Below are positions 9,299 to 62,099 of a DNA stretch of 64,000 bases, in pieces. Source of the DNA: Klebsormidium nitens (taxonomy: Eukaryota; Plantae; Klebsormidiophyceae). Position 1 is the first letter of the stretch; every line of letters begins with the position of its first letter. A program made the translations under genes and the position numbers. The notes beneath the pieces are model-generated. The model was given only the letters and a program-made list of their open reading frames with translations. It was not told the origin of the DNA and ran no database searches. The DNA lies in assembly GCA_000708835.1 (NCBI GenBank), contig DF237465.1, positions 1-64,000 of the forward strand. Reading direction: 5' to 3'.

Positions 9299-12265
9299 CT
9301 ACATCATCTTCCTGCCTGACGGGAAAGTGGCGGACGGTCCGCACCCCGTGTTGGCGGTACCGACCGGGTTTCCGGACGCCGGGAAGTTCTGCTTGATGGC
9401 TTCGATGGCGGACGCCTGCGCATTGAATGCGACCTGGGAGATGCTGGTGGGGATGCCGGTGGGCAGGAAGAGCGCGCTGCCGATCCTCTGCAAAGAAACA
9501 AAGGTTTGTGAGCGGCACGATTGACGGAGCATTTGATCGGACGGCTGCGAGTGAGATGTGGGGAAATGCTCGTGAGAGTGCGGGTTGCGCAGGAAAGCGC
9601 GCAAGCCGACTCTTTGATTTTCAAAGGGAAAAGGCACGAGTTCGGGGTCTTGTTTGATGGTACGGTTGGTGGGATTTGATAGGACAGATCAAGCGAAAGC
9701 ATGCTAAGGTTTGATGCGGAAGTTTGCCTGGGGTTTAGGTGGGTCAAGGGTTCCAGCTTGTCCGTAGGCTGAAGTGGCCGCGACCACCCACCATCGGGAA
9801 GTGGCTGTTTTTACTTCCAAAACGTATCCTTTACCAATTGACGCCCAGGCAATCGCTCCCTGAAAGTTGGCGGCTTCAACAGAGCACAAGTGCAACTAAT
9901 ATTATGGTTCCCGACCATTCCGCCCTAAGACACCGTTTCTTCCGAGCCGTTTCGAATGAAGCTTCCTCCAAGAGGGATCCCTCGAGATTTGCCCACATCT
10001 TTCGTTCAGCCCGCTTTCAAGAAGAAGCTCATCAGTCTCGATATGTGGAGGTGTGCTAACCTGGGTCCCCGGGTTCTGGCTGTTGAGCGCCGCGAGCGCC
10101 TTGGCCGGGTTGTTGGGGCTGGTGTTCTGCTGGAAGTGGATCAGACCGCGGGGGAAGACGAACACGTCGCCCGCGTTCAGGGTCGTCGAGAACAGAGTGT
10201 CTGCGGCAAAGGCAAAGGTGACGTCAGCAAATACATACGGAAGGATGGGGGAATGCTAACGGATCAGCCCGCGAAGGAAGACAAAGACATTTCTCACGTT
10301 CAGGGTCGTCGAGAACAGAGTGTCTGCGGCAAAAGAAAGGTGACGTCAGCAGGTTAAGTACGGAAGGATGGGAGAATGGTGACTTCCAGCCTGCGGGAGA
10401 AGTTCAGATTCGGCCTACATTCAGAATTGTCGGGAACAGCGTGTCTGCGGCAAAAGGGAAGGTGACGTCAGCAGACTGAGTGCGGAAGGACGAGAGAACT
10501 GGTAGTAGTTTGAACCGTGGGGGAGACGAGTACGTCACCCCAGCTGATCAGCGTGCATATACGTGTTTCGGACAAGATGAGACGACGCCAGCAGCTTAGG
10601 TGCGGGAGTGTGGCGGCCCAGAGTCAATCGCTCTGACAGGGCGTCAAAGGTACAAGGAGCGTCTTTTGAGACGACTAAGAGTCCCTCTCTGACGCTGTCA
10701 TTGACAGTCCTACTAAGCAGCGCAATATTAACACTCCGTCGACGGCACTGCCAAGTCGCTCGACCCCTCTGCCACCAGAACGTTGACATGAGAAGGTAAA
10801 CTGAAGACCACGGCTGAGACCGCGTGCGAAGTCTCACTGTTGGTGTCAACGAAGCCGACAAACAGCTGGCCCTCGATGACGTACAGGATCTCTGTCGCGC
10901 GGGGGTGGGTGTGGATGGGGCTGGACACATAGCCGATCAGGGAAATGTCAGATACGTGTGCAGTTCCTCGGCTTCAAAACTGCCTTCAAATCTACCTTAC
11001 ATTATGAGGTCAGTAGTTCTCATTGTTTGCCCGTTCCGAGGAGCAAGAAATGAATGAAAGATGCCCCCAGGCCCTCTATAAACAAAAGGATATCGTGATC
11101 CAGGGTGACTGAACTCCTTTGCGAGATGAGCTTTCAACCTTTGAGGCTTAGCAAAGACCATAGTTGCAGGCTGGCAAGAGGCAGAGACGCACCAAACCTT
11201 CCATTGTTAGCACCCATGTGAAGGAAGTAGAAACTGGAGAACTGAAGATCCAGTGATTGATAGATAACGAAGCTCAAAGAGAAGTCTGAGAGGTTCTAAG
11301 GGTTGAACGTGTTAAGAAGGGCCCGGAGCCTCACTTCTGGCCGCACGGCGCGTAGTTGACGAAAGTGTACGAGATGCCCTGCGACCTGCACAGGACATAT
11401 GTTGCACTCAATACTCAAGCGAATCCAATGATGATTCGGAATCCGGAATCAATTTCAATCAAGGTTCGAGCTCAACTAGTTCAGCATCAGATCCACCAGA
11501 TAATCTAGCAAGAGAGTTTAGAGAAGCCTTCTTTTGGCAGAAAGTCAACAACAACGATCTGAATAATTGTGACTACTGTAGGGGGAGGACTTTCATCTAG
11601 ACAGGCAGGACCTGATGAACAGATCTACATGCGCATGTCGATTTGCCAAGAAACTTTCTGATGCTGAGGGATTTGCTCAAGGGACTGGAGCCTTACGTGA
11701 GAGCGGGGAAGGTTGCAGCATTGGCAGCCTTGGCGGCGCTGCCCTGGCCTGACGTCACGTTGACGTTGTTGAGCCCACGGAAGGCGAAGTTGGCACCAGT
11801 CACTGCAGCCCACCAAGAGCTATCAGAGCTTCAGGACAACCAGAAAAGATTTCACACTCCCTTAAAAAAATGTTTTTGCATTATATCTGCAACTGGTGAA
11901 CCTGCTTTGTAGAGACTGCCTTTTAGCAACTGGGGTCTTGTTTGAGACCCAGGCGACTACAGTAGCACCTTAGTTGAGACCCAAGGCTTAAAAATCTGTC
12001 GCTAGCTACAGACTTGAGGAGCCTGCATCCGTGACTCCTGAATATATCATATCATTCTACCTTATGAGCATCACTTCTGTAAACTCCCGGACTTTGAGCT
12101 CCTTCAAATCTTGGAGGATGTTTTGGAGATACCAGACTTACCTGGTGCACCATTCACTCCGGACAGTACGAAATCCGCAAGGGGGTCCGCGTCCGATGCG
12201 GACGCCACAGCTGCGACCGCTGCCAGGACGAGCAGCGCCAAGCCGGTGCGATAGCTTATGGCCAT
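9299..12265 (-). CDS. Germin-like protein B, 230 aa; exons 12265-12142, 11802-11697, 11385-11335, 10920-10838, 10200-10061, 9487-9299
   Basis: Same exon lengths as copy A for exons 1-5 (124/106/51/83/140). Carries [10 protein letters not shown] and [16 protein letters not shown], with an intact frame. Confidence 0.93.
10201..10590 (-). repeat. Tandem ~122-bp copies of the intron4/exon5 junction of germin-like B
   Basis: Minus-strand CAG acceptors at 10203-10201 (real), 10326-10324 and 10447-10445. A fourth decayed unit lies near 10566. Units 1-3 have GCTGACGTCACC upstream. Confidence 0.9.
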
Positions 12266-15056
12266 ATTTCTGAGAGGGACGTGAGAGCCTATATCCGCAG
12301 TGGACTAAATTAGCACTGTTGGGTTGCTTCAAGCAGGTTCCCTGCGTTGGCGTAGCACGCGGCGGGATGGTAGCTAGGAAAGGTTGGACTTGGTGTGAAA
12401 GAATGGACTATAAGGGACGCGCTGGACGCTGCTCTTTGTATCTACTGATTAGCCACAGCTCTTAGCTGCTCGGAAACAGCAGGGCCGTTTGGAGCTGAGT
12501 GTGGATGAAGATCACAATCTGGATCGGAGGAATTGGTTGAAGGAGCTGGAGCTGCTGTTGTAACTTTTGTAGCTACGACGCTCTTTTTGGAGCTTATATA
12601 TCAGAAGCTGGAGATATTGGATCCGCCCAGCTGGTTCCATAGTAAGACTCGGAAAGACTTGGTCAGATTAGCCATGACTGCGTGCTGCAGGGTTTGACCG
12701 CAATGCATGTGGCAGAGCACAGGTCTTTCCAGGAGTCCGGTGCACTGCAGTAATGCCAGCCATGCGACGTCCCACCGTTTGCTTTCTAATCTTAGCTGGT
12801 CTTTGCAGGGAACTTCACTGTCAGGAGCATGAGCTCACCCCAGCATATTGAACCTACGCAAAACTTACGTCACAAGAGGTACTATCCTGATCTGCATGAC
12901 GTGTGCTCTGAAATCATAGAGTGAGACTCAGTCTTGCTGCTTGTGGGGCCGTGTGCGTCAACCCGGCGTCTTCAGAACTCAGGTTGCCAAGCCTAAAGTT
13001 GACCCTGACTTTTGATTCGTGAGGCGGCAGCTTCCTGTGAGATGCGCAGCGCAGACAGAAGTTTGACCTTCTCGATTGTCGCATTAAATGCTTCCGGTGA
13101 CATCATCCGACGGCTCGCGCGCAGGTTGCGACGGTATGACGGAGGGTGCTGACAAGGACAGGCACATGCCCCGCCGAATACGACCTTGGTACAAAGTTCA
13201 AACCTGCGATACGTTTTACGTACCGCACCGCACTGAGCCTCCGATCCCGGCCATGCCAATGCCAGTGGATGCCGCCGCGCGCGCCCGCGCACTCAGACGG
13301 CGCTTCTGCGTACACGTACTGCAACTTGCAAGTAGTTACATAGCGTTGCATCTTCGCGGCCACATCTGAATCCGTCATAATAGACCTGGCACGGGTCAAG
13401 TCGCGACTCTGCACTCCCTGAATAAATGTGCACGGTTCCACATGTGACTAAAGTGGTCGTCCCGGCCCAGCTCGCTCGTCAGGCAACGTCGAGCCGGCAA
13501 CATCCACATTATACTGATTACAAGGACGTCAGCTTTAATATCGGACTCGAGCTCGGAACGTTTCGTTGTGAATGCAAAACTTTGGCAAAACTGCGTGTAT
13601 AATGTCCGGCTCACTACGTACTCATTTCTTTACAAGCAGTGGTTTTGGATTGACAAATGAATTGTTTCCAAACGTAGACTTCAAAAGCCCGATTAGTAAG
13701 GAGAATTAGATGTTAGAATTGATCAAGCGACCTACTCGAATTAGAGGATATATGGGAGCCATGCACCCAAGAGGCTAGAACCACGAAATACCAGTGATGA
13801 GGAAACAGATTCTTCATGAACTAGACTCAAGCCAAGTACTATCTAGCTACATGCCTGGTTGTCCATGCGTTTCAGCAATCGGCTCTCGCTGAGTCAATGC
13901 TTGGAGCTTGTCATAACAGCTTATAGTCAAAGAATAAAGGTTCGGTCGCGTAGATATTCAAGTGCAGGTCTTTCAAGTCCTCACGGTGGCGAGGATTCCG
14001 AAGTTGATTGCTTGATCGATCTGGAAGCGTCTAAATGAGTTTCATGTTGGGTGAGGGAGGCCTTAGAGGGCTGCGGTACATGACACCGCATGCGCATGAA
14101 AGACGCAGAGAACGCCGAGAGAAGGGCCGGGGTTGTTAGGTTCCGGCAGTAAGACATCAAGAAGCTGATCAGCGCGCCCCAAAGTCTAAACATGTAGCTT
14201 CGGATTGGATACCCTGTCTGGCCTTCGCTTCTGATGCACTATATAACTGAATACCACCTGCTTTCCTTTGAAACCCAAAGGACTCCCTTCGACCTCGCCC
14301 ATCGACGGGCGCAGAAGGGGAACAAATTGCGGGAGGCGGGCTAGGAAAGTTGAAGACGCAAGCAAGGGACGGATGAATGTTTCTTCATTGCGGGTCCTTG
14401 CTTGTCAAATGTGCAGATTGATCATATCCAAACGCTTTTGCACTGACGAGTCGCCACAAATACACAATCCAAGAGGAAGCTGTATGTAAATTGCGAATCC
14501 TTATCGTTCGTGCGCGCGAGTGATCCCCAGCAGATAGAGAACCAAGCTTGAGTCCATTGATCTTCCTTTTGCGTCTATTCTTTCCGGGTGGCGAAAAGTC
14601 ATTGGCGTTAGCGGTCGGCCTTGAGGCAAAATACGTGAACGGGAAAGCGCAGGGGCAGGGACTGTAGTCGGCCACGTCCGAGCACGGTCAACGTACCAGA
14701 GATGATCTCACTTTGTAAACAGAGGTGTCTTTAATCTAACTCTTGTAGACGCGCTTCAAAGCGCTTGAAGCCCCCTCGAAAGAAACGATTTCTCCGGTCT
14801 ACAATTTCCATGAACTCTTTCTGACAGCCAATAACTTACACCTCACTCACTCACTCACTTACCTAAATCACCGCGTCTTTCAGTTAGACGGGTACGTCAC
14901 GCCGGGTCCGCACCCCGTGTCAGCGGTACCGACCGCGTTCCCGGACGGCGGAAAGTTCTGCTTGATGCCTTCGATTGCTGACGCCTCCGCATTGAATGCG
15001 ACTTGAAGGATGCTGGTGGGAACACCGGTGGGCAGGAAGAGCGAACTGCCGATTCT

Positions 15057-15500
15057 CTGCAGGGAATGGGAAGGATCTGAGACGCACGATCATAGAGTGG
15101 ACGGTTTGCAGGACTCGGGCCGGTGGAGATGCTAGTTCGGACGCCAATGGGCAGAAAGAGCGCGCTGCCGCTTCTCTGGATAGAAGGCGAAGGATGTGAG
15201 CCGCAAGTTTGACGAAGCTTTAGAAGGACGATGCGATCGCGCGAGAATTTAATGCGAATGGGATGCCGGTGGGCAGAAAGGGCGTGCTGCGAACTCTGCA
15301 AGAAGCGGTGGATGTGAGCACCACGATTGAAGGAGCGTTTTATCAGAAGTTTGTACATGGGCCGAAAGTTGATGTCAGTGGGCACGAATATCGCGCTGCC
15401 GCTCCTCGGACGATTGCAAATGGGCAGAAAGAAAGGAGAAAGAAGTGCTGGTGGGAAACGCCGGTGGGTAGGAAGAGCGCGCTGTCATCTCTCTGCAGAG
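15057..15500 (-). repeat. Tandem decayed copies of the intron5/exon6 junction of germin-like C
   Basis: Acceptor G at 15057 (real), 15176, 15296, 15407 (AG lost) and 15493. Each is followed by a variant of AGxxxxGCAGCGCGCTCTTCCTGCCCACCGG. Confidence 0.85.
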
Positions 15501-15833
15501 AAGGCGGATTTGGAAGTTAGGCAACAAAATCCGTAAACTCCGTTTTCTCGGACGATTCACCATACGAAGTAAAGCTAACCCCACAGCCGCAGAGAATAGG
15601 GCGGAAGAAGGAGAGCCTGCCTCCTGGTCGATTTTTTTCCGCTCGAACGCTTGATTGAAGAAGAAAAAGGCGCCTGACTTGTTAAGTGACTCACAGGTTC
15701 GACACACAATGAAAACGCTGGCATTGATGAAGGGCGCACAGCGCTTCGCGCACGCGCGTGCGCCTGCTTTCGATTCGACCGCATGATCAAAATCTCTAGA
15801 GTACTCAAGGCATGTCCATAGGATCGTTCAGGA

Positions 15834-16071
15834 GATCCTTGCACTTGATCGTTCATTCCCGAGCGCTCTGTTCAATATCACCACTGCAAGACTGCCAATC
15901 TATCGAACTCAGAGCGGGCGGGTAAAAACAAGCTCGCGCTCCTGTTTCCCCACGCGACCACCTGATCATAAACCTGGTACTCAAAAAAATATCCGGCTCA
16001 TCTTAGAGGTCCTTGGACTTGATCGCTCTTTCACAAGCGCTCTGTTCAGCTTCACCATCGCAAGACTGCCA
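15834..16071. repeat. Direct duplication with 174-bp period
   Basis: agcgctctgttca at 15862 and 16036, and gcaagactgcca at 15886 and 16060, with similar flanks. Confidence 0.75.
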
Positions 16072-16478
16072 GAAGAGGTAAGAGGGAGAACATGGATTCC
16101 CGGCCAGCTTGTGCAATGTGATGAACCCCCTTGGGTATAACACCCCCAGATTGACCATTCGGCCCGACAGTGAGTGTCGCAAAACTTGCCTACTTGGATC
16201 AAGGCTGTTTGGTTGCACAGCCTAACCAGAGCAATCACTGTGAGCCTTTTGGTACAAGGGTTTGCGGGAAGCTGGCCTCTTCTAACGACTTTACGACTTT
16301 CTGGTTAAGTGTGCAAAGCCTAGCTAGCACATACACCTGTTTGGAGGCCATTCAGAACCTGCATATTCAGTGACATAGAGAATCAAAGCCTTGTCAGGTT
16401 GACCCACATATTGGAGCGATTCTTCGTGCAAAGAAGCTGGAGACACCTTTCCTGACATATTGCTTTGTGGTTCTTCAG

Positions 16479-16561
16479 ACCCCTCCACACCCATCCCCGC
16501 GCAACAGAGATCCTGTACGTTATTGAGGGCCAGCTGTACGCCGGCTTCGTTGACACCAACA
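16479..16561 (+). CDS. Inverted exon 4 of germin-like C ([28 protein letters not shown])
   Basis: ttcttcag|...aaca|gtgagt. It is 83 nt, identical in length and phase to exon 4 of copies A and B. Confidence 0.92.
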
Positions 16562-17097
16562 GTGAGTTCCGCCCACCATACCCGGCTGATTACAATCGTT
16601 GTGCTAACGACAGTTGTTTAAGTGTCGAAGAACGGTTTTCGGTTGCCTTAATAAACATATGTGCGTTTACAATGGTCCTTCACTTTTCCGACAACGTCTC
16701 ATCACCGACCGTGACATGTGCTTCGCTCAGTTTCCCTTTGATCGTCTGAACTAGCCTTGCTCCCTCTTTCCATTCAACTCCTGCATATAAGGGGAGCTTT
16801 TATATATGGGACTTGGGTAGAAGGCCATTCTCCGGATTGCCTACAGAACCACATGATAAAACCCGATGCTGTTTTATTTCGACTAAGATGAGACCGCCTC
16901 CGGCCTTCCTCTCTCTGTCACGGTACCTGGTGCCGATAAAGGGCTTGTCTGCCAGAGCCTGCTTCAATGCTGACGTCGTCTGTAGGATACGCTACTGTGA
17001 ATAAGGCTGGGCTCGACGTGTCCCTCTTCCCTTAGGCTCGTTTTGAACGCAGTCTCGCAAGCAATATGCTGACGTCGTCAATCCCCCTGTCCTGCAG

Positions 17098-17237
17098 ACA
17101 CTCTCTACGCAACGACGCTGAACGTGGGTGACGTGTTCGTCTTCCCCCGCGGTCTGATCCACTTCCAGCAGAACACCAGCCCGGACAATCCTGCCAAGGC
17201 GCTCGCGGCGCTCAACAGCCAAAACCCAGGAACGCAG
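17098..17237 (+). CDS. Inverted exon 5 of germin-like C ([47 protein letters not shown])
   Basis: cctgcag|...acgcag|gtgagc. It is 140 nt, same as copies A and B. Confidence 0.92.
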
Positions 17238-20200
17238 GTGAGCCGAAGGATCAAATTCTGCAAATAGTCCAGATGACGTCACACGTTTGACCGGACCGGC
17301 CTGGATGCAGATTGACAGAACGGAACGGAACCGAACGGAACGCACCTTGAGGAGAACATGGACTCCCGGCCAACTCTGGACAGGCCTAGACGGGGTCAAC
17401 GGTCTAAATGCAAAGGCTAACTAGACTGGAAAGAAAAAGCCAGTAAGATTGAAGCACCACCAAGGTCAGGGGAACGTTCCTATCTAGGTCAAAAAAGTTG
17501 GAAAAAGGAAACATCTGTAGAAACACACGGTAACTCACACTTGGCCGCACGGCGCATAGTTATAGAAGGCGGCTGAGATGCCTTGGGACCTGCAAGGAGT
17601 GGCAAGCTTTACTGCCCATTCAGCGTGGCTACGCTTAAATTCACCATGACACAAGATGTGATGTAGGATAAGCCTAGGGCCCATGACTGGCCTAGCGCCA
17701 ACATAGGAAGAGTTGATAAAGGGACTTCCTTACGGGCAGTCAAGAAGCAAGATCAGACAAGTTGAGAGTCGACATCAGACAGATTGATTGGTCCACAAAA
17801 GAACTATCTACCACAATGAAGAGCCCTGCATTGCACAGCATCTGTCTGCAGAAACATTGTGTCTCAATGCTAAGCGATTTCCTAATGGGAGTGAGGCCTT
17901 ACGCGAGAGCAGGGAATGTTGCGGCGATGGCAGGCTTGGCGGCGCTGCCCTGGCCTGACGTCACATTGACGTTGTTGAGACCACGGAAGGCAAAGTTGGC
18001 GCCAGTCACTGCAGCCCACCAAGCAACATTGAAGCTCATGACATCCAGAAGTTGGGGTCAATGCTGCTGGTAAAAGCATTTTACCTTTGTCTTACTTGCC
18101 AAAGGTGCCCTTACTTTGAAACCCGGTGAATTGTCGCATGCAGGTGGTCAATGGCAGACCGGGTTGTGTCAATGCAGCTCTAGTAATTTGCTTGCAAACT
18201 TATTGCTTTCTGATCCACGTTTCATATACACAGCCTTTGGACTTCAGCCTGAGTGAATGCAGATATGCCCAGCATTCAGGAAGAGTTGATTACGTATGAC
18301 AGTCTGACAACTCTTTTTTTTGCAGAGCTGAGGCATGCTGCATTGCTCGGCTCCTTAAAACGTTCGAGAATGCCCTCGGTATCATATGGCGCCTCAACTT
18401 TCTCACCTGGGGCCCCATTGGCTCCGGAAAGGATGAAGTCTGCGACCGGGTCTGGGTCCGAAGCAGACGCCACAATGGCGACCACTGACAGGACCAGTAA
18501 CGCCAAGCTAGTACCATAGCTCATAGCCATAATTCTGACTTGAAATAGAATTCAAGAAGCTACAAGGGACGGTGCCCCAGCTAAACTCTCTTCTCAGCTG
18601 AAGCTGAAGTTTGCTCAATAGTCCTGACTGCAAGCTGATGAAGCTGGACGTACGTGTTGAGACAAGTCGAAACGCGGGCAGCCTCCACGCCTCAGGGAGC
18701 CAGCCCTGTAGGAGCTGTTCCGTGTATTTTACACCTACACGTTCTGGCTGGCGCCTTCAAGGTGTTCTGGGAACTGACGTGCAAATGGCGGTGCAGCAAG
18801 TGCTGAGCGAATGTGGAATCTAGCTCTCTCTCGACATTTAGGTAGAATCCTGCAACCTGCAAGCCAAATTATTCGCAAACAAGTTACCTGGCATTGGCTA
18901 GCAGCAGAAGCCCAAGCTTCCTTCCACCAGCGTGTAGGAGGACGCCAAATGGAAGCTCAGAGCGCGTCCGTCGCTTTGGCCTCCGAATCCCGATCTGCAC
19001 TCTGCGCACATACCGGGGGCGGTCGTATAAGACGTCACTGCTGGCGACTCCGTAGATTGAGTTCCGCCGCTCGGAGTCGCCGCCGTCCACGCGCTGGATT
19101 GCAGGAGGTCAATGATTGGATGCTTCCGTGGCAGGCAATCATTGATTGATGAATTTCCGATCGGACTCGATCCGGCGCCGACTCCGGCCGCTATCCGGCC
19201 GCTATGCGGCTATCGCCCCTGCGCCCCGGCCGATCGCTGATGGTTTCTTCCGTGATCGTCGACGGGCCCATGAATGATCATCCGAACGCCATTCCGACGA
19301 GACGACGAATGGGCCAGTAGATTCCTTATCATTCTTCTTCTGGATGGTTGTCGAACGACGGATAAGTGGAATTAAGCCCGTTGTGTACGTTGTCGATGGA
19401 CAAAGGGGTATATGAGGCTCTTACAAGTGCGAGCTTGCATGGTGTGGAGACGGCGCGGCTCCCCCGTACATGACTTGGCATTCGCCGTCCAAAATCGTCC
19501 AACAATATACACGTCTTAAAGTCGACGGGAGGTCGAACTTGAGAACGTACTCGACTCAACCACGTCGTCACCTTGAAAAGGATACGGAAAGACCCATCTC
19601 GGCAATCAATCCACGCGACCAATTAGTGCGGCGCACTGTGGACCCGGACAGTCGGACAATGCTGTGAAACAAGGTAATGACCTGTTCTTGATCACGTCTT
19701 CATCCGGTGTTTCCTTCAGATGTTACTAATATTCTTTGCGACACTCAGGACTCGGAGCAATATAAACTTAGAGACTGTCATGAGATGATCTCTCATTCAA
19801 CAGCGACATACCAGTCAGGATACGCGGACGCGAAAAATCGGAATGAGTTGTGGGGCTTGTGGAGTCAACCCTCAGTTGAATCGGCAAAGGGCATTAAGAA
19901 CGAGACCCGCACAGTGACTCGACTTCGATCTGTTACATTGAGGTTGATAAGAGGACTTAGAACTTTTAAAGTCTTAGACGTATGCGTCGATAATGTGAGG
20001 ACAGGGTCGAGGACAAGGTCAGCTCTCGTTAGAGACATTCAAGATGCGAGTCGCTGCTTAAGAAGTGAAGTTTGTGCTGGCACATCTTTCGAAAGCTTAT
20101 CTGCCAGTCAGGCGAGTCGAAGCGCGACGTCGCCACCTGATTCACGTTAACCGTACCAGATGCTAAAGCCCCGCCTCTCCTGCCGCCACCTATCCTTATT

Positions 20201-33585: not shown

Positions 33586-36500
33586 CTATCGTCCCTCCTC
33601 TCGCAGCGTCCCCGTGCCAGAGGGGAGGCCTAACAAGGAGGACAATTGGGCTGTGGAGTTCGCCAAACCTACTGGGACGTATTGTTGACTCCCTTGGTAG
33701 GCTACCTCTTGCAGTTGCTCAAGGCCGCCACCCGTGTCTGTGTGCCGTTGCTGCGGGAACTGTGCAGCGAAGCCGCCCCGATCCCGTCCATAATTACCCC
33801 ACCGAACTTCGGAGTAACCACTCTGTTGCTGGTAACTACCTTGGTTAGGGTGAAAACCGCTTTGGTTAGGTTGCACCGAGTACCCACCCTGGTTAGGCCG
33901 ATACAAGGACTCTGTTACGGCCGGGTCGAAACTCTGCGGAGCTCGTTGCGACTCCTCGGCCTGCGCGGCTGGACCCGCATTTACAGGGCCTCTCCAATCC
34001 TGACTGCGGTCACTCTGCGGCTGCACGCCGACGTAGAGGCCTTGCACAGACGGTTGTTCCTGCCACTGGTTGCGGAGGCCGTATTGGGCGGCCTGTTGTT
34101 GGGTTACAACACGACGGATAGGGAGGGGCTGCTGCGGAACAGGGCCCGAGCTTGGAGTTGGCGCCAGTGGGAGGCTTCGGAAATTAGTTGTGTCTCCGAG
34201 AGGACCCGAATTCAACCCTGAGCTTAACCCGGTTTGGCGGCTCGACACCCGGGCGTAGGAGGGGTGAGGTTCGGTGTAGACTGGGGCGGTGTTTAGGCCT
34301 TGGGGAGTGTGAGAAACCGGGAGACCGTGCATCCTCTGCTGGCTATCGAGGTTCAATAAAGCTTGCAAGGTCGAGGGAGGTGGGTTTTCAACCCCCCTGA
34401 CGGCAGCCGCTTGACCCGGTTTCGGAGCAACCTGAGGGTTTGGGAAAGCTGGGTTATGCGCCGCCCATTGGAGAGGCGCTAGACTAGAAGAACCGTCCGA
34501 GGCGCGGTGGGTCTCCGCCTGACTGACAAGGGTTTGCAACGTTTGGAGGTGCTGGGCGACCGATTGTAAGCTCGGATGGTGCTGGTTAAGCCGATAACCC
34601 CCGGACATGTTTGGCGGTGGGGCTTGTGGGTTAGGCGGATAACCGGCCGAGTTTGGCATGGAGGCTTGCGGACCGAGCGGGTGATTTGATTGCGCTGGAG
34701 CTCCGCCTAGCACTCTGGAACCCGCTGCTAAACCCGCTGCCAAACCCGGCTGCTGACCGCCAGGCCCTGTCGTGGGACCTCCCGCCGTCACCGACCCCGC
34801 TTTCTTGTCCTTCTTCGGCTTCGCAGGGCCTTTCTTGGCCTTCTTAGCACCCGTGTTCGGAGCGAATCCGGCGAGAGGTTGACCGGGAGGGAGCAGACCG
34901 ATCGGGGGGGCAAATTGCGGCCGGAAGAGCGGCCCCCCCTGAAGCTTAGCACCGCTCGGTTGGTTCGCCTCGGTAGACGGTCTCGAGATCGGACTCGCTC
35001 TTGCCCCGAGGCGCGGCCAATTGGGGGCCGTCTCCGGAGATTGCAACATACGCCGACTTTCTCCCGACTCTAGTTTCCCGGCCTCTCCCATTTCCGCGCC
35101 CTCTGCTCCGTCCTTGTTCTCTTCCCCCCCACTCCGGTCCCGGGGGGTGTTTATCGGGGCCGGCATCTGCGGCGGCGACATCGGATGGCTGCCCACCTTC
35201 TCCTTCGGGGGGATGATCCGGATCCGGACGATCTTCTTCTTGCCGTCCGAACCGGGAGCCGTCTTCGCCGCCAAACCCGCCTCCTGCGTTAACTTGGCGG
35301 AACCGCTCCCCGGCTGCGCGGAAACGCCAAAGCACGACCCCCCCGGACTTTGGTTTCCCAAATTCTCCAGACCCTGTTGTCCGGGACCCCCCATACCCTC
35401 TCCTCTTGACGCACCCCCCAATGCTCCCCCCTGCTTTTCCGCTGCCTTCTCCCCCGTTCCGTTCACGACCGACCGGAACTGCACCCCCCGGAAGTCATTG
35501 ACGCCCCCCAGACGCACCACCAGCCGCCCGTTCCCGCTATCCGACGGTCCTGGATCTCCGCTCACGCCACTCCCATTCTGCCCCCCCGCCACCAAGCCTT
35601 GCAAGGGACCCCCCGGGAGCCCCCCCCCTCCCCGTTTCTCGCCCCTCCATGCCCCCTGGTCGCGCCGCGCTTCTTCTTTCCGGCCCACAGGGGCACCCCC
35701 CCAAGTCGTCCCCCCTCGGGGATCCCCCCGATATCCACCCCCCCGCGCCAAGCCATCAATCGCGCCGCCCCCTCTTCTCCGCCCATTTCTGACCCCCCGC
35801 CGCCCGCTGTCTCATCCTCCGAAACCCCCTTGTTTTTGCTCGCCGACGGACGCCTGCGGCTGGGCCGGCGGCCCGGTTCGCTTCCCTCCTCGTCGGAACT
35901 AGAGGGGGGAGTGTCGGAGTCGTCTTCCCAGTCGTCGTCTTCTTTCGGCCGCCGGCGCAGTTGGCGCGTCGCGGGGCGCGGGTGCCGCTCGTCGGCTCTT
36001 CCCTCCGGAAGGCTCTCGTAGTCGTCGCTGGGGGCAAGAATGGGAGAAAGGTCAGTTTGACCTACAAACTCGTCGAAGTCTGCGACCATCAATATGCATC
36101 TGAGAGATTTGAGCGATGATCTTAACCTCAACTTTCTACTTCTCGAAGGAGAATAAAGCAGGACCGTGTACAGCTTTAGTCAACATTCGCTTACGGACAT
36201 CTACCTGGTTTCGGACAAGGACTACACCTGCAACGTATCTACCACACCAAAGCGGTAAGTGAGGATCAGAACCGGGATAACTCTTGATAGTCCCCTTCGT
36301 CGTCAGCGCGATAAAGTCGGATGCGACCATGCGAAAGTGCATCGCCAGATTGCTTTCCTGTTTTTCCTGATCTTAAACATGCACCTCAACCGCCTAAAAA
36401 TCAGAAATCGAAAAGCAGGTTCATGTGAACGGGGCTAGTTGGCCATGGATGCTGAAGCTTGATAAACGATCAAAGCGGGCCGCGTCTTAGCCCCATGAAG

Positions 36501-45650: not shown

Positions 45651-46922
45651 ATGGCCAGGGAAACGTCAATCGATGATTTGCCGGAAGGTATACTGACAAC
45701 CATATTTGAATTCAAGCTGCGCACCATGGAGGAGATGATGACCCTCAGTTGCGTCTGCAAAAAGTGGAGGAGTGCGGCATTGCAGACAAGATACTTGTCT
45801 GTAGAGTCCAAGTATCTAGAAGAGCCAGAAAGTCCTTTTACAAAAGTACTGCTCCTTGATTTACTAGCCAAGTATACAATGCTGGAAGACGTCGAATTTG
45901 ATGTGACCGAATTGGATGCCCCTTTCCTTTGGGCATTCCTGAGGGGGAGGGACAGACTGACAAGGTTCACTTTTGAAGGAGGGCACCTCGATTTCGACAG
46001 CTCCGCTGCCCTTTTCTCAATGCTCATGCTTCTGCCAAAGTTGAGACAACTCAAAATCAAAGGACTGTCCTTAAATGCGGGCGTGCTAGAGCAGAGACGA
46101 AACAGGTCTTTCGAGTCTCTTCAACAGATCCATATGAGTACTTTCTTCATCTCCCAAGCTGATCTGGACTCCTTGATGTCTCAGTGCCCCAGTCTGCTTA
46201 AATTGACTCTCATACAGGCCACTCTGGAAGTGGATGTCATAGAGGACCTCTACATCCGATCGCTTTTGCTAGAAGAACTAGAGTTCCGTCTAGCTCGCGG
46301 TACGGTCGAGCTGTACATCGACACCCCATCCTTGAAGTCTGCCGCATTGGGTTTGAACAACTATGGGAGTGCAGTATTTCTGGCGCACCGGTTGATGTCC
46401 CTTGATCTACACGCCTGCAAGCTAATAACAACAGCAGGGTCCTTTTCAGGGGTGAAGAACCTAACATGGGGCACCGCATGGGGGCCTAAAGGTGTTGTCA
46501 GTATAAGCTGGGACAGCCTTGTTGGTCTGCTTAATCAGATGATTGGGCTAGAGTTTTTGTCTCTCTCTTGCAACAACGTCAGCATGGGAGCAACAGGTGC
46601 TCGTGCTGGCATTAGCCAGTTTTTTGAGGGTTTGGGAAACCTTACAGAACTTCATGTTGAAGGAGCCTGGTTTTTCCGCACGCTGGTAAAATCAACCCCA
46701 CGGAAGGAGCAGCCACTTAAGCTTGACACTCTGGACATTGAGCTGCCCAAGCCTCTCCCCCATCGTTGCATCAGCCATGTCAATTGGCTGCTATGTAGCA
46801 GCCCAAACCTTGAGTATCTGACCATCTTCACTGAGGCCAAAAGCCAAGCCCTGACCAGGCTTGTCTCCGCTTATCGGAAGGATCACCCAGATGTCCAAGT
46901 TGACTTTGAGCTAGAAGATTAG
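45651..46922 (+). CDS. Intronless F-box protein with LRR-like repeats, 423 aa
   Basis: N-terminal F-box IDDLPEGILTTIFEFKL...LSCVCKKWR. Later segments have LxxLxL spacing (LRQLKIKGL, LLKLTLIQA, LEFLSLSCN, LEYLTIF). Confidence 0.88.
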   Translation: MARETSIDDLPEGILTTIFEFKLRTMEEMMTLSCVCKKWRSAALQTRYLSVESKYLEEPESPFTKVLLLDLLAKYTMLEDVEFDVTELDAPFLWAFLRGRDRLTRFTFEGGHLDFDSSAALFSMLMLLPKLRQLKIKGLSLNAGVLEQRRNRSFESLQQIHMSTFFISQADLDSLMSQCPSLLKLTLIQATLEVDVIEDLYIRSLLLEELEFRLARGTVELYIDTPSLKSAALGLNNYGSAVFLAHRLMSLDLHACKLITTAGSFSGVKNLTWGTAWGPKGVVSISWDSLVGLLNQMIGLEFLSLSCNNVSMGATGARAGISQFFEGLGNLTELHVEGAWFFRTLVKSTPRKEQPLKLDTLDIELPKPLPHRCISHVNWLLCSSPNLEYLTIFTEAKSQALTRLVSAYRKDHPDVQVDFELED

Positions 46923-56500: not shown

Positions 56501-59500
56501 GACTTTTTCCGTCGGTCCGATTATCACCCAGAACTTCCGGCGTGATCCTTCATAGTTGTCTGACGCCACACCTAAATTGAATCTGACGTCATCTCTCCAG
56601 GTGCGCTCGCTGCGCCCCCCTCACTCCCTGGTGCAGACCGTCCCTCTGCGCTCCATGACCCTGCTGACGTCAGCGCCAGCTGGCAGCGCCCTGGTGGCCG
56701 ACGACAAGGCCGTGTACCGCTTGCAGCCGGTCGACGTGGCAGCACAGGTAGGCTCTGCTGCTTTCTGTCGTTTCAATGAAGTGAGCGCTTTGCAAATCAG
56801 AAATTGGTTGCTTGGAGGTTTTCTGTTCGCTGAGGCTTCAGAGAAACATGAAGTTCACGGCTCGGGGATGCAACAATGCCCTGCCGCAGAGACAGTGGAA
56901 CGAGTTGCTCTGCTCTGTAACGCCGTGATAGTGTTGACTTTTGACTTTTGAGAAGCTTTGTCCAGACCCGCCAAGTTTTTAAATCTCCATTGTCCGCCAA
57001 CACGAGCACGCACTTGCTGAAGCGCAAGCACACCGTTTCAGCACTGTTTGACCCCGTGATCTTCTCCATGGATGTGAAACTGTTGCCAGCTTTTGACGTT
57101 TGCTTGGACGTGCAGATCTCGCAGCTCCTCGCGGGTCGCCAGTACGAGGACGCGTTGCTGCTTTGCCAGCAGCTGCAAGGGGAGGAGGCGCAGTCACGAA
57201 CAGCGAAGGAAGACGAGATCCATACGCGCTACGCAGAGGACCTGTTTCAGAGGGGCGAGTATGAGAGTGCCATGGTGAGAAACTATCTGGTTTCTCAGCC
57301 AGTCTGATCTCAGTATTCCGACCGAGGAAAGGCCTACTCAGATTATGTTGTCAAGCGCTGGCTTGCAATGTGATTTGTTGAACCGACGGAACACTGTGCA
57401 GAGCTGTTTGTATCTCGAAGGACACGCGCGAAATGCTGTCGAGTAGTCGAGATCTCCGGGCGAAGGGCTGTCGTCAACGGCTTCGAGAGCGGGGCTCAAG
57501 CGGGAATCTGGAAGCTATGATGACCAAAAGGGCATCACGCGTGACCTTCAACCGCAGAATATCGAGACTCAACGTGCCAACAAAAAAAGAGCACTGCTTT
57601 TCAGCTCTGCTAATGGGGTTTTTACCCTATCGTTTCCAACACTTTCTTTCCTTTTGGACTTGAACGCTCCGGTTGCGTAGCCCGCCTTACTCAACGCTCC
57701 GTTTCCAACTGCAGGCTCACTTTGCGGCAGCTCCCCTGGACCTTCCATCCCTCCTATCTCGATACTCCTCCATCGAGCTCCCGTCAAACATTCCCTCTGA
57801 ACCTGAAGCCCAGTTGAGAACCGGCCCCGACAACCTAAACAATCCTTATACCGAAAGACCCGTTTCTAGAGAGAGTTCCCTCTCGCCAACCGTTGCAAAC
57901 AGCCCGCTTGCGGGCCTCACCCTTACCCGCGCTCTGAAAGCCCTTTCGGAATTCTTGACACTGAAGCGGCCGGGCATAGTATCCCTAGTCGAGCCTCGCC
58001 GAAGTAGTGTCAGTCTGCCCTCCTCCGATTACAGCTCGAGGGAGCCTGCACCTTCTCAGGGCCTCTCGCCGCAGCAGCAGGCGACCCTTCTTGACACCGC
58101 GCTGCTCCAAGCGCTGCTGGCGACGGACAGTGTCAAGCAGGCGCGCCAGCTGCTCGACGGCCCCAACTTATGCCACGTGGCGACCTGTGAGCCGCTCCTT
58201 TCGGCAGATGGACGGTTCGAGGAGCTTTTGGCGTTGTATAGATCGCAAGGGGCGCATCGAGAGGCGCTCGATCTGCTCAGACGGCTGGCTGAAGACGGGT
58301 CTGGGGGGTCAGCTTTCGGGCATGAGCGGCTAGCGGAGTATTTGAAGCAGCTGGGGAGCGACAATATTGGCCTCCTGTTGGAGTACTCAAAATGGCTTTT
58401 GGAGGTGAGCGAACGTTCTGCTCTCGATGGTGCGAGCAATTAACATCCTCAGTTCTGCTTCAATCTATGAGGTAGGGAGAGCGTGCGAGGGATCGTGCCA
58501 TCGTTCGTGGATGGAGCGGCTCTTTCGCCTCCTCCAGGTCGCGTTTCCAGTTTTGCGTGAATCAAACGCTTTCATTCGAGTAGGCGAAGTTCGCGTTTCA
58601 GCGCATCTCGCAGTCAGCCTTTGAGCAAGGCTTTGTGGAAACGTCTGATGGTGGTGTCAGGAGCAGAATCCGGATGGCTCCTGTTGCTAACAGTCAGCGC
58701 CCATGAGCAGCCACGCCTTGCCGAATCCATCGCTGACACTTGCATTCTCTCCATCAGCTTGGTAAAGATTTCTGTTGCCTCATGTTTCAGAAGTCGCAGA
58801 ACGAAGTACGCCTCATGTTTCACAAGTCGCAGAACGAAGTACCCACCCTTCTTTGCAGGCTCATCCTGACGAAGGCCTCGCCCTCTTCAAAAACCTGGAC
58901 CCCCCCATCCCGCCCCAAACCGTCCTCGCCCACCTGCGCACCCACGCTCCCCAGCTCTCCGCCGCATACCTCGAACACATTCTGGGGGGGTCCGCGGGGA
59001 GTCAGCCGCCCAGCCTGCCCGCCACCCCCCCGCAGCTGTCCCGCCTCAGCAGCAGCAGCTTCGGGGGGGACAGTTTCGGGGGCGAGAGCACCCCCCCGGC
59101 GGCGAAAACGCCGACCGAGGACGAAGGGCTGAGCAAAGAGCTGGTGCATTTGTATCTCGAACGTGTTTTGGAGGAGGCCAAAGCGGGGAGTGTTTCAGGT
59201 CGGGGGGTCGGAGCGGAAACCGGAACAGCGGAAGGGGGAAGAAAGTGGGACGAGCGAGCGAAAAGCGAGACGCGGCAGAAACTGCTGTCGCTGCTCGAGC
59301 GGTCGACTGCGTACGATCCGAAGCGGCTGCTGTCCGAAATTGCGGACGGAGTTCTGCTGTACGAACGCGCTCTTCTGTTGGGCCGGCTGGGAAAACACCG
59401 GCAGGCGCTGTTTCTCTACTCGCGAGCGTTGGGGGATCCCCCAGCCGCGGAGGAATATTGCACGCGGTTCCACGAAGAGGGGGGGAACGTGGCGGGGGGG

Positions 59501-62012: not shown

Positions 62013-62099
62013 GGGCTATGAACTCTGTTGGTGATCGTATACGATATATGTATTACATATATGCAACGGGTATACGATCACCCACAGAGTTCATAGCCC
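62013..62099. repeat. 87-nt hairpin (30-bp arms, 1 mismatch)
   Basis: gggctatgaactctgttggtgatcgtatac (62013-62042) versus gtatacgatcacccacagagttcatagccc (62070-62099). Confidence 0.9.

What the first reader, a model, noticed from the sequence alone, without database searches (positions are those of the whole stretch)
16080..17348. Inverted exon cassette: exons 4-5 of germin-like C are flipped but the gene is otherwise flawless
Seen: the order along the minus strand is exon 1, 2, 3, [exons 5 and 4 on the plus strand], exon 6. All six exons have correct lengths, canonical splice sites, matching phases (exon 3 ends GT, exon 4 starts A, giving Val) and no stop or frameshift. Re-inversion gives a complete 226-aa protein. 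The flipped part carries all four metal ligands. As shown, exon 3 to exon 6 splicing is out of frame. Inference: (a) a very recent inactivating inversion, (b) a reversible ON/OFF DNA switch (phase-variation-like, unusual for a plant-lineage nuclear gene), (c) strand-switching/trans-splicing, or (d) a misassembly. No recombinase is encoded in the window. The plus-strand cassette could also yield antisense RNA against paralogs A and B.
Basis: partly seen in the sequence, partly recalled or inferred. Interest (0 to 1): 0.9.

Follow-up and report, generated by a model that had tools for sequence, protein, structure and literature searches.

The report
Recent inversion disables a germin-like gene
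One of three neighbouring germin-like genes has its two metal-binding exons flipped by a real and very recent inversion of about 1.27 kb, so the sequenced strain makes only broken transcripts while a near-identical relative still makes the normal mRNA: a natural knockout, with no evidence of a DNA switch.

Summary
Germin-like gene C lies on the minus strand (18530-14880). Its exons 1-3 and 6 are collinear with paralogs A and B. Exons 4 (16479-16561) and 5 (17098-17237) lie on the plus strand. All splice sites are canonical, and re-inversion gives a 226-aa cupin with every metal ligand.

It is not a misassembly. DNA contigs and RNA contigs from six further runs of at least five studies (2012-2024) cross one or both breakpoints, or carry the inverted-form splice products.

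Those runs show no exon3-exon4 or exon5-exon6 junction of C. Exon 3 instead splices to exon 6 (frameshift), splices to a cryptic acceptor at 17257, or stays unspliced. The last two RNAs run on through the antisense of exon 5. All products end at 94-146 aa without the cupin core.

One run under another organism label (X25) carries C-identical transcripts with normal E3-E4, E4-E5 and E5-E6 junctions and none of the aberrant forms. No sequence difference from C is listed. The inversion is therefore a very recent, lineage-specific null allele.

No inverted repeats or recombinase support a switch. The flipped piece is bracketed by two direct copies of a dispersed 50-70-nt repeat, which hints at a break inside a foldback element.

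First-stage notes flag other small gene-breaking inversions elsewhere in this genome; I did not test them.

The parts
18407..18530 (-). Gene C exon 1 (124 nt; start codon, signal-like N-terminus, DPDP box)
   Evidence: Sequence and translation. RNA joint 18008/18407 with minus-strand GT..AG in all RNA runs.
17903..18008 (-). Gene C exon 2 (106 nt)
   Evidence: RNA joints 18008/18407 and 17587(+2)/17901(+2). 84% identical to B exon 2.
17539..17589 (-). Gene C exon 3 (51 nt). Its donor at 17538 is used for three different fates.
   Evidence: Joints 17539->15056 and 17539->17257, plus unspliced contigs 17228-17568.
17305..17375 (+). Right copy (R) of the dispersed breakpoint repeat. Core 17351-17375.
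   Evidence: Direct repeat D5. 2 matches in the window against 0 expected. Extended alignment and fold. Loose end at 17350 from another genomic locus.
17098..17237 (+). Exon 5 of C, inverted (140 nt; cupin motif 2 with the fourth metal-binding His)
   Evidence: blastn reversed against A and B. Cupin_1 E 2.9e-12. 1FI2 alignment. Joints 16561->17098 and 17237<->15056 in run X25.
16562..17097 (+). Intron 4 of C, inverted with the cassette. Fully covered but never spliced out in RNA of the inverted lineage.
   Evidence: Collinear RNA contigs 15027-17159, 16037-17164, 16205-17164 and 16498-17164. No C-identical 16561->17098 joint in X5, X8, X9, X11, X12 or X26.
16479..16561 (+). Exon 4 of C, inverted (83 nt; HTHPRATE, three metal ligands)
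   Evidence: blastn reversed against A and B. Cupin_1 E 8.6e-9. Joint 16479<->17539 in X25.
16060..16109 (+). Left copy (L) of the dispersed breakpoint repeat. Core 16085-16109.
   Evidence: Loose end at 16088 from another genomic locus in X1, X9 and X12.
17153..17257 (-). Cryptic 3' splice site at 17257 and the start of the aberrant terminal exon, which reads the antisense of exon 5
   Evidence: Joint 17257/17539 (CT..AC on +) at depth 9-23 in X5, X8, X9, X11 and X12. 105-nt contig 17153-17257 in X5, X8 and X26.
15058..15502 (-). Four decayed tandem echoes of the exon-6 acceptor region in intron 5
   Evidence: Repeat families D1 and D2. blastn to exon 6 of A and B. Sequence.
14880..15056 (-). 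Gene C exon 6 (last exon, through the stop codon)
   Evidence: Sequence and translation. Joints 15056/17539 (reference lineage) and 15056<->17237 (X25).

Best explanation
Gene C is the third of three tandem germin-like (Cupin_1) paralogs. In the lineage that was sequenced, a segment of about 1.25-1.27 kb was cut out and rejoined backwards. The segment runs from inside intron 3 to inside intron 5 and carries exon 4, intron 4 and exon 5.

Shown:
- The inverted arrangement is real and is the only one seen in DNA and RNA contigs of this lineage from 2012 to 2024.
- The gene is still transcribed from its own promoter.
- Exon 3 has lost its partner. About 40-45% of transcripts skip to exon 6 (frameshift, 146-aa product). 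About 35-45% use a cryptic acceptor at 17257 and run on through the antisense of exon 5, intron 4 and exon 4 (stop after 94 residues). About 15-20% stay unspliced.
- None of these can make the cupin core, so the allele is a protein-level null.
- A run filed under another organism label expresses C-identical exons with normal E2-E3-E4-E5-E6 junctions and none of the aberrant forms.

Inferred:
- That organism carries the ancestral collinear allele.
- The inversion is so recent that the flipped exons have had no time to decay, which explains why the gene looks 'flawless'.
- The breakpoints coincide with two direct copies of a dispersed 50-70-nt repeat. With one copy inside the flipped piece, the ancestral state would have been a foldback (MITE-like) element of about 121 nt in intron 3 or intron 5. 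The likeliest mechanism is a double-strand break at the centre of that foldback, a second break in the other intron, and end-joining in the wrong orientation.
- The event is a one-off mutation, not a programmed switch.
For: Inversion relative to paralogs: (reversed blastn hits for E4 and E5, collinear for E1-3 and E6).

Gene integrity.

Real in DNA: X1 contigs 14700-17155 and 17154-17964 cross both breakpoints.

Real in independent RNA data:
- X5 15027-17159 and 17228-17568
- X8 16037-17164 and 17228-17568
- X9 15996-16522 and 17228-17563
- X11 16037-16204 and 17228-17568
- X12 15995-16483 and 17228-17568
Introns 1 and 2 have depth 0 in X5, X8, X11 and X12, so this coverage is RNA and not DNA carry-over.

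Aberrant splicing: joints 17539->15056 (depth 27/20/11/18/14) and 17539->17257 (23/13/9/12/17), against E1-E2 depth 61/32/21/30/25. Reading frames.

Intron 4 is covered at high depth but never removed in these runs. That fits minus-strand RNA, in which its splice signals are antisense.

Intact allele elsewhere, from X25:
- Joint 16479<->17539 at depth 192 with 51 nt of exon 3, plus 8 loose letters equal to C's own exon-2 end
- Joint 16561->17098 (GT..AG)
- Joint 15056<->17237 at depth 190, with no listed mismatch to C at sites where paralogs differ
- No 17539->15056 or 17539->17257 joint
- Zero depth over 15943-16450, 16578-17085 and 17340-17466
- Low-depth intronic contigs 15649-15877 and 17666-17826 with 0 mismatches

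No inverted repeats at the boundaries.

Repeat family: and loose ends at 16088 and 17350 in X1, X9 and X12 that are absent from the window. The two core copies differ at 2 of 25 positions, so they pre-date the event.
Against: - All read evidence is from assembled contigs. These drop rare variants and carry no strand, so a low-frequency opposite orientation in the reference lineage cannot be excluded.
- The collinear DNA of organism G was not seen. Only its mRNA was, and no X25 contig crosses a breakpoint.
- X25 is labelled 'DNA?' although it behaves like cDNA. Its organism label is coded, so I cannot show it is a different strain rather than another culture of the same clone.
- The X25 'other letters' table was truncated (18 rows hidden), so 'identical' means 'no difference listed'.
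- The foldback model rests on a hairpin that follows by construction from a direct repeat. No target-site duplication was found. Head-to-head, tail-to-tail and two-separate-copies geometries cannot be told apart.
Confidence: 0.75

Rival explanations
1. Reversible ON/OFF DNA switch. The same clonal lineage can flip the cassette. Run X25 shows the ON state and all other runs the OFF state.
For: Both functional states exist among samples whose sequence is indistinguishable over about 1.2 kb. The flipped exons and all splice sites are intact. A specific repeat sits at both boundaries.
Against: - The boundary repeats are direct, not inverted. Recombination between them would delete the cassette, not flip it.
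- No recombinase or transposase domain in the 13 longest ORFs of the window.
- Seven laid runs of organisms A/B from 2012-2024 (X1, X5, X8, X9, X11, X12, X26) show only the inverted form or its products, and X25 shows only normal products. There are no mixtures.
- Intact exons are equally explained by recency.
Confidence: 0.06
2. The inversion is older, and organism G (or its sample) expresses a second, collinear copy of C that the reference lineage lacks or lost. Under this reading the intact mRNA says nothing about when the inversion happened.
For: X25 gives only mRNA, not locus structure. The family is prone to tandem duplication: three paralogs plus exon-boundary echoes.
Against: - X25 lacks every aberrant product of an inverted copy, and lacks coverage of the cassette's introns, although C-type exons reach depth around 190.
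- The inverted exons 4-5 show no listed difference from the X25 transcript. An old, unconstrained inverted copy would have diverged.
- The reference DNA contigs show no collinear junction.
Confidence: 0.08
3. Assembly error. The true DNA is collinear, and the cassette was flipped by the assembler.
For: Small inversions flanked by repeats are a known assembly artefact. The best DNA run may be the assembly's own source.
Against: - De novo k-mer contigs from RNA runs of several other studies cross both junctions exactly as in the window.
- Those runs contain splice products that only the inverted DNA can give: E3->17257 running into antisense exon 5, and E3->E6.
- The normal junctions are absent from them.
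Confidence: 0.02
4. The inverted gene is rescued at the RNA level by trans-splicing or strand switching between a minus-strand transcript (E1-3, E6) and a plus-strand cassette transcript.
For: All splice sites of the cassette are intact. X25 shows E3-E4 and E5-E6 junctions that map as 'opposite strands' on this window.
Against: - In X5, X8, X9, X11, X12 and X26, where the inverted DNA is documented, no C-identical opposite-strand joint exists.
- Intron 4 is never spliced out there although it is well covered.
- The opposite-strand joints in those runs carry 8-22 mismatches and belong to paralogs.
Confidence: 0.01

Closest known systems
Germin / germin-like proteins (Cupin_1; barley oxalate oxidase, PDB 1FI2/2ET1)
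   Same: Exons 4 and 5 hit Cupin_1. Exon 5 aligns to 1FI2 residues 118-159. The sequence has HxHxxxxE and PxGxxHxxxN motifs, a size of about 226 aa, and a hydrophobic N-terminus followed by DPDP.
   Different: The usual N-terminal Cys of the DFCV box is absent (DFIL here). Enzymatic activity is unknown. In the sequenced lineage this copy cannot be translated through the cupin core.
Gene-disrupting intragenic inversions as null alleles (for example the F8 intron-22 inversion in haemophilia A; from general knowledge)
   Same: An inversion with breakpoints in introns separates exons onto opposite strands. The exons stay intact, but the mRNA is abolished or truncated.
   Different: The F8 type arises by recombination between large inverted repeats and is recurrent. 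Here no inverted repeats flank the segment, the piece is only about 1.27 kb, and both breakpoints lie inside one gene.
Invertible DNA switches of bacteria (fimS, hin, shufflons; from general knowledge)
   Same: A short DNA segment whose orientation decides whether a functional product is made. Both functional states are seen among near-identical samples.
   Different: The defining inverted repeats and an adjacent site-specific recombinase are missing. No mixed orientation appears within a lineage. This is a nuclear, intron-containing eukaryotic gene.
Palindrome or foldback-element fragility (Drosophila FB elements, palindromic AT-rich repeats, hairpin-capped breaks processed by Mre11 complexes; from general knowledge)
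   Same: Re-inversion places two copies of a dispersed repeat into a foldback of about 121 nt (DNA dG about -29 kcal/mol against -15 +/- 3 for shuffles). One breakpoint would then sit at its centre.
   Different: The foldback is reconstructed, not observed. No target-site duplication was found. The family is known here only from four partial copies.
Inverted gene fragments that give antisense or hairpin RNA against paralogs (soybean CHS I locus, Arabidopsis PAI1-PAI4, maize Mu killer; from general knowledge)
   Same: Gene C's transcripts contain the reverse complement of exons 4-5. These are 81-90% identical to A and B. They share an identical 44-nt stretch (17135-17178) with a highly expressed paralog (contig depth 564 in X5).
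   Different: No small RNAs and no silencing of paralogs were examined. This is a possible side effect, not a demonstrated function.

Membership tests
Germin-like protein (Cupin_1) | Cupin_1 domain above Pfam's gathering score | tested here: met
   E4 scores 35.6 bits and E5 46.9 bits against a cut-off of 22, although each is only a fragment of the domain.
Germin-like protein (Cupin_1) | Metal ligands His, His, Glu (motif 1) and His (motif 2) | tested here: met
   HTHPRATE in E4 and [10 protein letters not shown] in E5. E5 aligns over the ligand His of 1FI2.
Germin-like protein (Cupin_1) | Secretory signal peptide and conserved N-terminal disulfide | not tested
   The N-terminus is hydrophobic, but no signal-peptide predictor was run. 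The usual DFCV cysteine is replaced (DFIL).
Invertible DNA switch (phase variation) | Inverted repeats at both ends of the invertible segment | tested here: not met
   No inverted pair of 20 nt or more in 14000-20000. No reverse-orientation match longer than 8 nt between the two breakpoint regions. Whole-window scan negative here. The boundary repeat is direct.
Invertible DNA switch (phase variation) | Site-specific recombinase encoded nearby | tested here: inconclusive
   The 13 longest ORFs of the window have no recombinase, integrase or transposase Pfam hit. Spliced genes and genes outside the window were not covered.
Invertible DNA switch (phase variation) | Both orientations present within one clonal population | tested here: inconclusive
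   Only one form per run in 8 laid runs. These are contigs, which lose rare variants.
Trans-spliced / strand-switching gene | Mature mRNA joining exons on opposite strands in cells that carry the inverted DNA | tested here: not met
   No C-identical E3-E4 or E5-E6 joint in X5, X8, X9, X11, X12 or X26. E3 goes to E6 or to 17257 instead.
Foldback / MITE-like element at the breakpoint | Multiple dispersed copies in the genome | tested here: met
   Two copies in the window, plus two other loci seen as loose-ended contigs whose 30 preceding letters align to the copies' inner part and are absent from the window.
Foldback / MITE-like element at the breakpoint | Terminal inverted repeats and a target-site duplication in an intact copy | not testable with these tools
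   No intact copy is available. The hairpin follows by construction from re-inversion. No duplication is visible at the reconstructed flanks.

The most novel reading that the evidence does not exclude
Run X25 and the reference runs come from the same clonal lineage, and the exon 4-5 cassette is a reversible, foldback-associated DNA switch. It turns a secreted cupin OFF and at the same time turns ON an antisense RNA against its paralogs. That would be a phase-variation-like device in a green-lineage nuclear gene.
Probability: 0.05. Interest if true: 0.9.

Novelty: new member of a known kind. Interest (0 to 1): 0.35.

Why it matters
In itself this is a well-documented natural knockout. A two-exon micro-inversion is caught so early that every exon and splice site is still perfect, and the matching intact allele is still expressed in a near-identical relative.

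It is useful in three ways:
- It warns annotators that this gene model in the reference is a transcribed pseudogene allele, and that this gene is not universally lost in the species.
- It shows what the spliceosome does when two internal exons vanish from the sense strand: skipping, a cryptic acceptor and retention in roughly equal parts.
- The breakpoints sit on copies of a dispersed repeat that would form a foldback in the ancestral state. First-stage notes flag other small gene-breaking inversions in this genome. If those hold up, a foldback-centred micro-inversion process may be shaping this genome and could be tested genome-wide.

The gene's own mis-spliced RNA carries antisense copies of the most conserved exons of an expressed gene family. 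This gives a testable route from a structural mutation to silencing of paralogs in trans.

Tried and rejected
- The loose-end sequences at 16088, 17350 and 17178 were searched in the window with up to 4 errors. They are absent, so they are other genomic loci and not alternative junctions of this locus. The loose end at 16566 is paralog B.
- The X26 loose end at 17539 (17 letters) was searched in the window and not found. It remains unexplained.
- An exact scan of metagenome contigs for the 22-nt repeat core gave 0 hits.
With exon 6 it gave 598 pattern matches but no relative. No DNA of an un-inverted relative could be fetched.
- Rfam on 14500-19000 at E up to 1 gave nothing, so the repeat is not a known RNA.
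- The TSD idea (cassette inserted at a staggered cut) was rejected for three reasons. The two copies differ at 2 of 25 positions although the event is very recent. Homology extends beyond the 25-mer. Other copies exist in the genome.
- Recombination between inverted repeats was rejected because there are none.
- A plus-strand transcript of the cassette was rejected as the main RNA, because intron 4 is never removed and the E3->17257 junction feeds minus-strand RNA into the cassette.
- Two literature searches found nothing on this locus.
- I did not submit the full-length spliced protein to the large protein searches, because it has no reference and would have had to be typed.
- My guess at the organism (a Klebsormidium-like streptophyte alga) rests only on about 104 Mb of DNA contigs and two organism labels for the same DNA. 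It stays unverified.
Full report
WHAT IS THERE

The window carries three tandem germin-like genes on the minus strand. All have the same six-exon plan: A (about 7427-4725), B (12265 to about 9290) and C (18530-14880).

In C, exons 1-3 and exon 6 match B in the same orientation. Exon 4 and exon 5 match A and B only in reverse: 16476-16566 at 90% and E 1e-29, and 17064-17243 at 85% and E 6e-53.

Exact limits from RNA joints and sequence:
- E1 18530-18407
- E2 18008-17903
- E3 17589-17539
- E4 16479-16561 (+)
- E5 17098-17237 (+)
- E6 15056 to about 14880

Exon lengths (124, 106, 51, 83, 140 nt) equal those of B. Every exon keeps AG/GT in its own sense. The re-inverted CDS reads as 226 aa.

E4 and E5 are Cupin_1 pieces. 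E5 aligns to barley oxalate oxidase 1FI2 across the ligand histidine. The one correction is that exon 6 lies about 1.4 kb away, behind four decayed acceptor echoes at 15058-15502.

IS IT REAL?

Yes. I laid Logan contigs of eight runs on the locus.

The DNA run X1 may be the assembly's own source. Its contigs cover 14700-17155 and 17154-17964.

Independent RNA runs of other studies and years give collinear contigs over one or both breakpoints:
- Left breakpoint: X5 15027-17159, X8 16037-17164, X9 15996-16522, X11 16037-16204, X12 15995-16483
- Right breakpoint: 17228-17568 in X5, X8, X11 and X12, and 17228-17563 in X9

In X5, X8, X11 and X12, introns 1 and 2 have depth 0. These contigs are therefore RNA and not contaminating DNA. 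Misassembly is excluded.

WHAT THE INVERTED GENE DOES

Introns 1 and 2 are removed normally. Exon 3 then has three fates.

- It splices to exon 6 (joint 17539->15056). Depths are 27, 20, 11, 18 and 14 in X5, X8, X9, X11 and X12.
- It splices to a cryptic acceptor at 17257 (depths 23, 13, 9, 12, 17). From there the RNA runs on through the reverse complement of exon 5, intron 4 and exon 4. Coverage falls off between about 16500 and 16000.
- It is not spliced (contig 17228-17568, depth 7-14).

These roughly add up to the exon 1-2 depth (61, 32, 21, 30, 25). The predicted products stop after 146, 94 and 94 residues. None has the cupin core.

Intron 4 is well covered but never removed in these runs. 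No C-identical E3-E4 or E5-E6 junction exists there. The 'opposite strand' joints seen at 85% likeness in X11, X12 and X26 carry 8-22 mismatches and belong to paralogs.

Trans-splicing is therefore not happening. The RNA over the cassette is best read as minus-strand RNA, that is, antisense to exons 4-5. Strand is inferred from the splice signals, because contigs carry no direction.

THE INTACT ALLELE

Run X25 dates from 2023 and comes from another study under another organism label. It is guessed 'DNA?' but shows GT..AG joints and empty introns, so it behaves as cDNA. It gives a different picture.

- A contig of depth 192 joins exon 3 (all 51 nt, preceded by 8 letters that equal C's own exon-2 end and differ from B's) to exon 4 at 16479.
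- Exon 4 is joined to exon 5 (16561->17098, GT..AG).
- A contig of depth 190 joins exon 5 (17237) to exon 6 (15056).
- At the sites where paralog contigs differ from the window, these contigs show no difference.
- X25 has neither the E3->E6 nor the E3->17257 joint.
- It has zero depth over 15943-16450, 16578-17085 and 17340-17466, regions that the other RNA runs cover.
- Its few low-depth intronic contigs (15649-15877, 17666-17826) and its UTR contigs have 0 mismatches.

So a lineage indistinguishable over roughly 1.2 kb expresses C normally. The simplest reading is that it carries the ancestral collinear DNA, and that the inversion arose very recently in the reference lineage. That explains why the flipped exons are flawless.

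Caveats:
- The DNA of that organism was not seen.
- The mismatch table was truncated.
- I cannot tell whether the coded label means another isolate or another culture of the same clone.

SWITCH OR ACCIDENT?

A recombinational switch needs inverted repeats. There are none at the boundaries.

The 13 longest ORFs of the window have no recombinase or transposase domain. They yielded only F-box/LRR and Vps39 hits.

Seven laid runs of the reference lineage over 12 years show one state only, and X25 shows the other state only. I put a programmed switch at about 5-6%. It remains the most novel reading not excluded.

HOW IT MAY HAVE HAPPENED

The flipped piece is bracketed by a direct repeat. The 25-nt cores lie at 16085-16109 and 17351-17375, with 23 of 25 positions identical. 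There are 2 matches in the window against 0 expected.

Homology extends leftwards to about 16060 and 17305, around a variable microsatellite-like stretch.

Contigs from two other genomic loci, seen in X1, X9 and X12, match the window only over this core. The 30 letters before the match align to the inner part of the repeat and are absent from the window. So this is a dispersed element with a sharp right edge.

The two copies differ at 2 of 25 positions. They therefore pre-date the very recent inversion and are not a duplication made by it.

If one copy lies inside the flipped piece, re-inversion brings the copies into a foldback of about 121 nt. Its DNA folding energy is about -29 kcal/mol, against -15 +/- 3 for shuffles. 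This follows by construction. The geometry is either of two:
- Head-to-head in the old intron 3: MITE-like, with outer terminal repeats, and breakpoints near 16059|16060 and 17304|17305.
- Tail-to-tail in the old intron 5: breakpoints at 16109|16110 and 17375|17376.

A break at the centre of such a foldback, a second break in the other intron, and end-joining in reverse would give exactly the present structure. I rate this mechanism at about 40%. Two separate direct copies, each cut at its edge, is the alternative.

COMPARISON WITH KNOWN THINGS

The gene is an ordinary germin-like cupin. The lesion belongs to the known class of intragenic inversions that produce null alleles. It differs from the repeat-mediated, recurrent type (F8 intron 22) in lacking inverted repeats. 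It differs from bacterial invertible switches in lacking both inverted repeats and a recombinase.

The by-product resembles loci where inverted gene fragments silence paralogs. Here the by-product is a promoter-driven RNA carrying the antisense of exons that are 81-90% identical to A and B. It shares a 44-nt identical stretch with a highly expressed paralog (contig 17135-17178, depth 564 in X5). No silencing was examined.

VERDICT

It is a real, very recent, lineage-specific inactivating inversion, which makes C a transcribed pseudogene allele. It is not an assembly error. Trans-splicing is not seen, and a switch is unsupported.

Novelty: a new member of a known kind. Interest is moderate to low (0.35). 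It is raised a little by the intact/inverted allele pair, the foldback-associated breakpoints and the antisense by-product.

The scan's first-stage notes mention the same breakpoint repeat (s1-267558). They also mention other small gene-breaking inversions elsewhere in this genome (s1-267557, s1-267645). I did not test those.

Noticed in passing
window 15058-15502: Four decayed tandem copies (spacing about 86-122 nt) of the exon-6 acceptor plus the first codons of exon 6 sit in intron 5 of gene C, upstream of the real exon 6. None is used as an acceptor in the RNA contigs laid.
   Followed up: partly
window 10261-10460: Paralog B's intron 4 holds at least two extra decayed copies of the exon-5 acceptor region, for example 10327-10261 at 79% to C exon 5. 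It is the same kind of exon-boundary echo as in C.
   Followed up: no
window 15832-15897 and 16006-16071: A 66-nt direct repeat (83% identical, 174 nt apart) lies in intron 5 of C. Its second copy overlaps the left breakpoint repeat by about 12 nt. Its relation to the dispersed element is unclear.
   Followed up: no
window 17135-17178: A 44-nt stretch of exon 5 is shared identically with at least one other, much more highly expressed germin-like paralog outside this window. RNA contig depth is 365-564, and the loose end at 17178 runs into unlike sequence.
   Followed up: no
window 62013-62099: A clean foldback with 30-nt arms (97% complementary) and a 27-nt loop. It is the only strong hairpin element found in the window, and it is unrelated in sequence to the breakpoint repeat.
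   Followed up: no
window 34001-36000: A G+C-rich island (65% against about 51% elsewhere) has long overlapping ORFs on both strands (for example 33586-35751 minus, 721 aa) and no Pfam hit.
   Followed up: partly
window 17539 (run X26): One 2012 contig joins exon 3 to 17 letters that begin like the cryptic exon at 17257 (7 letters). They then continue into sequence not found in the window. It may be a further aberrant splice product or a chimera.
   Followed up: partly
window 45651-46919 and 57673-58440: Neighbouring genes recognised in passing: an F-box/LRR protein (PF12937, PF24758) and a Vps39 domain-1 exon (PF10366).
   Followed up: no
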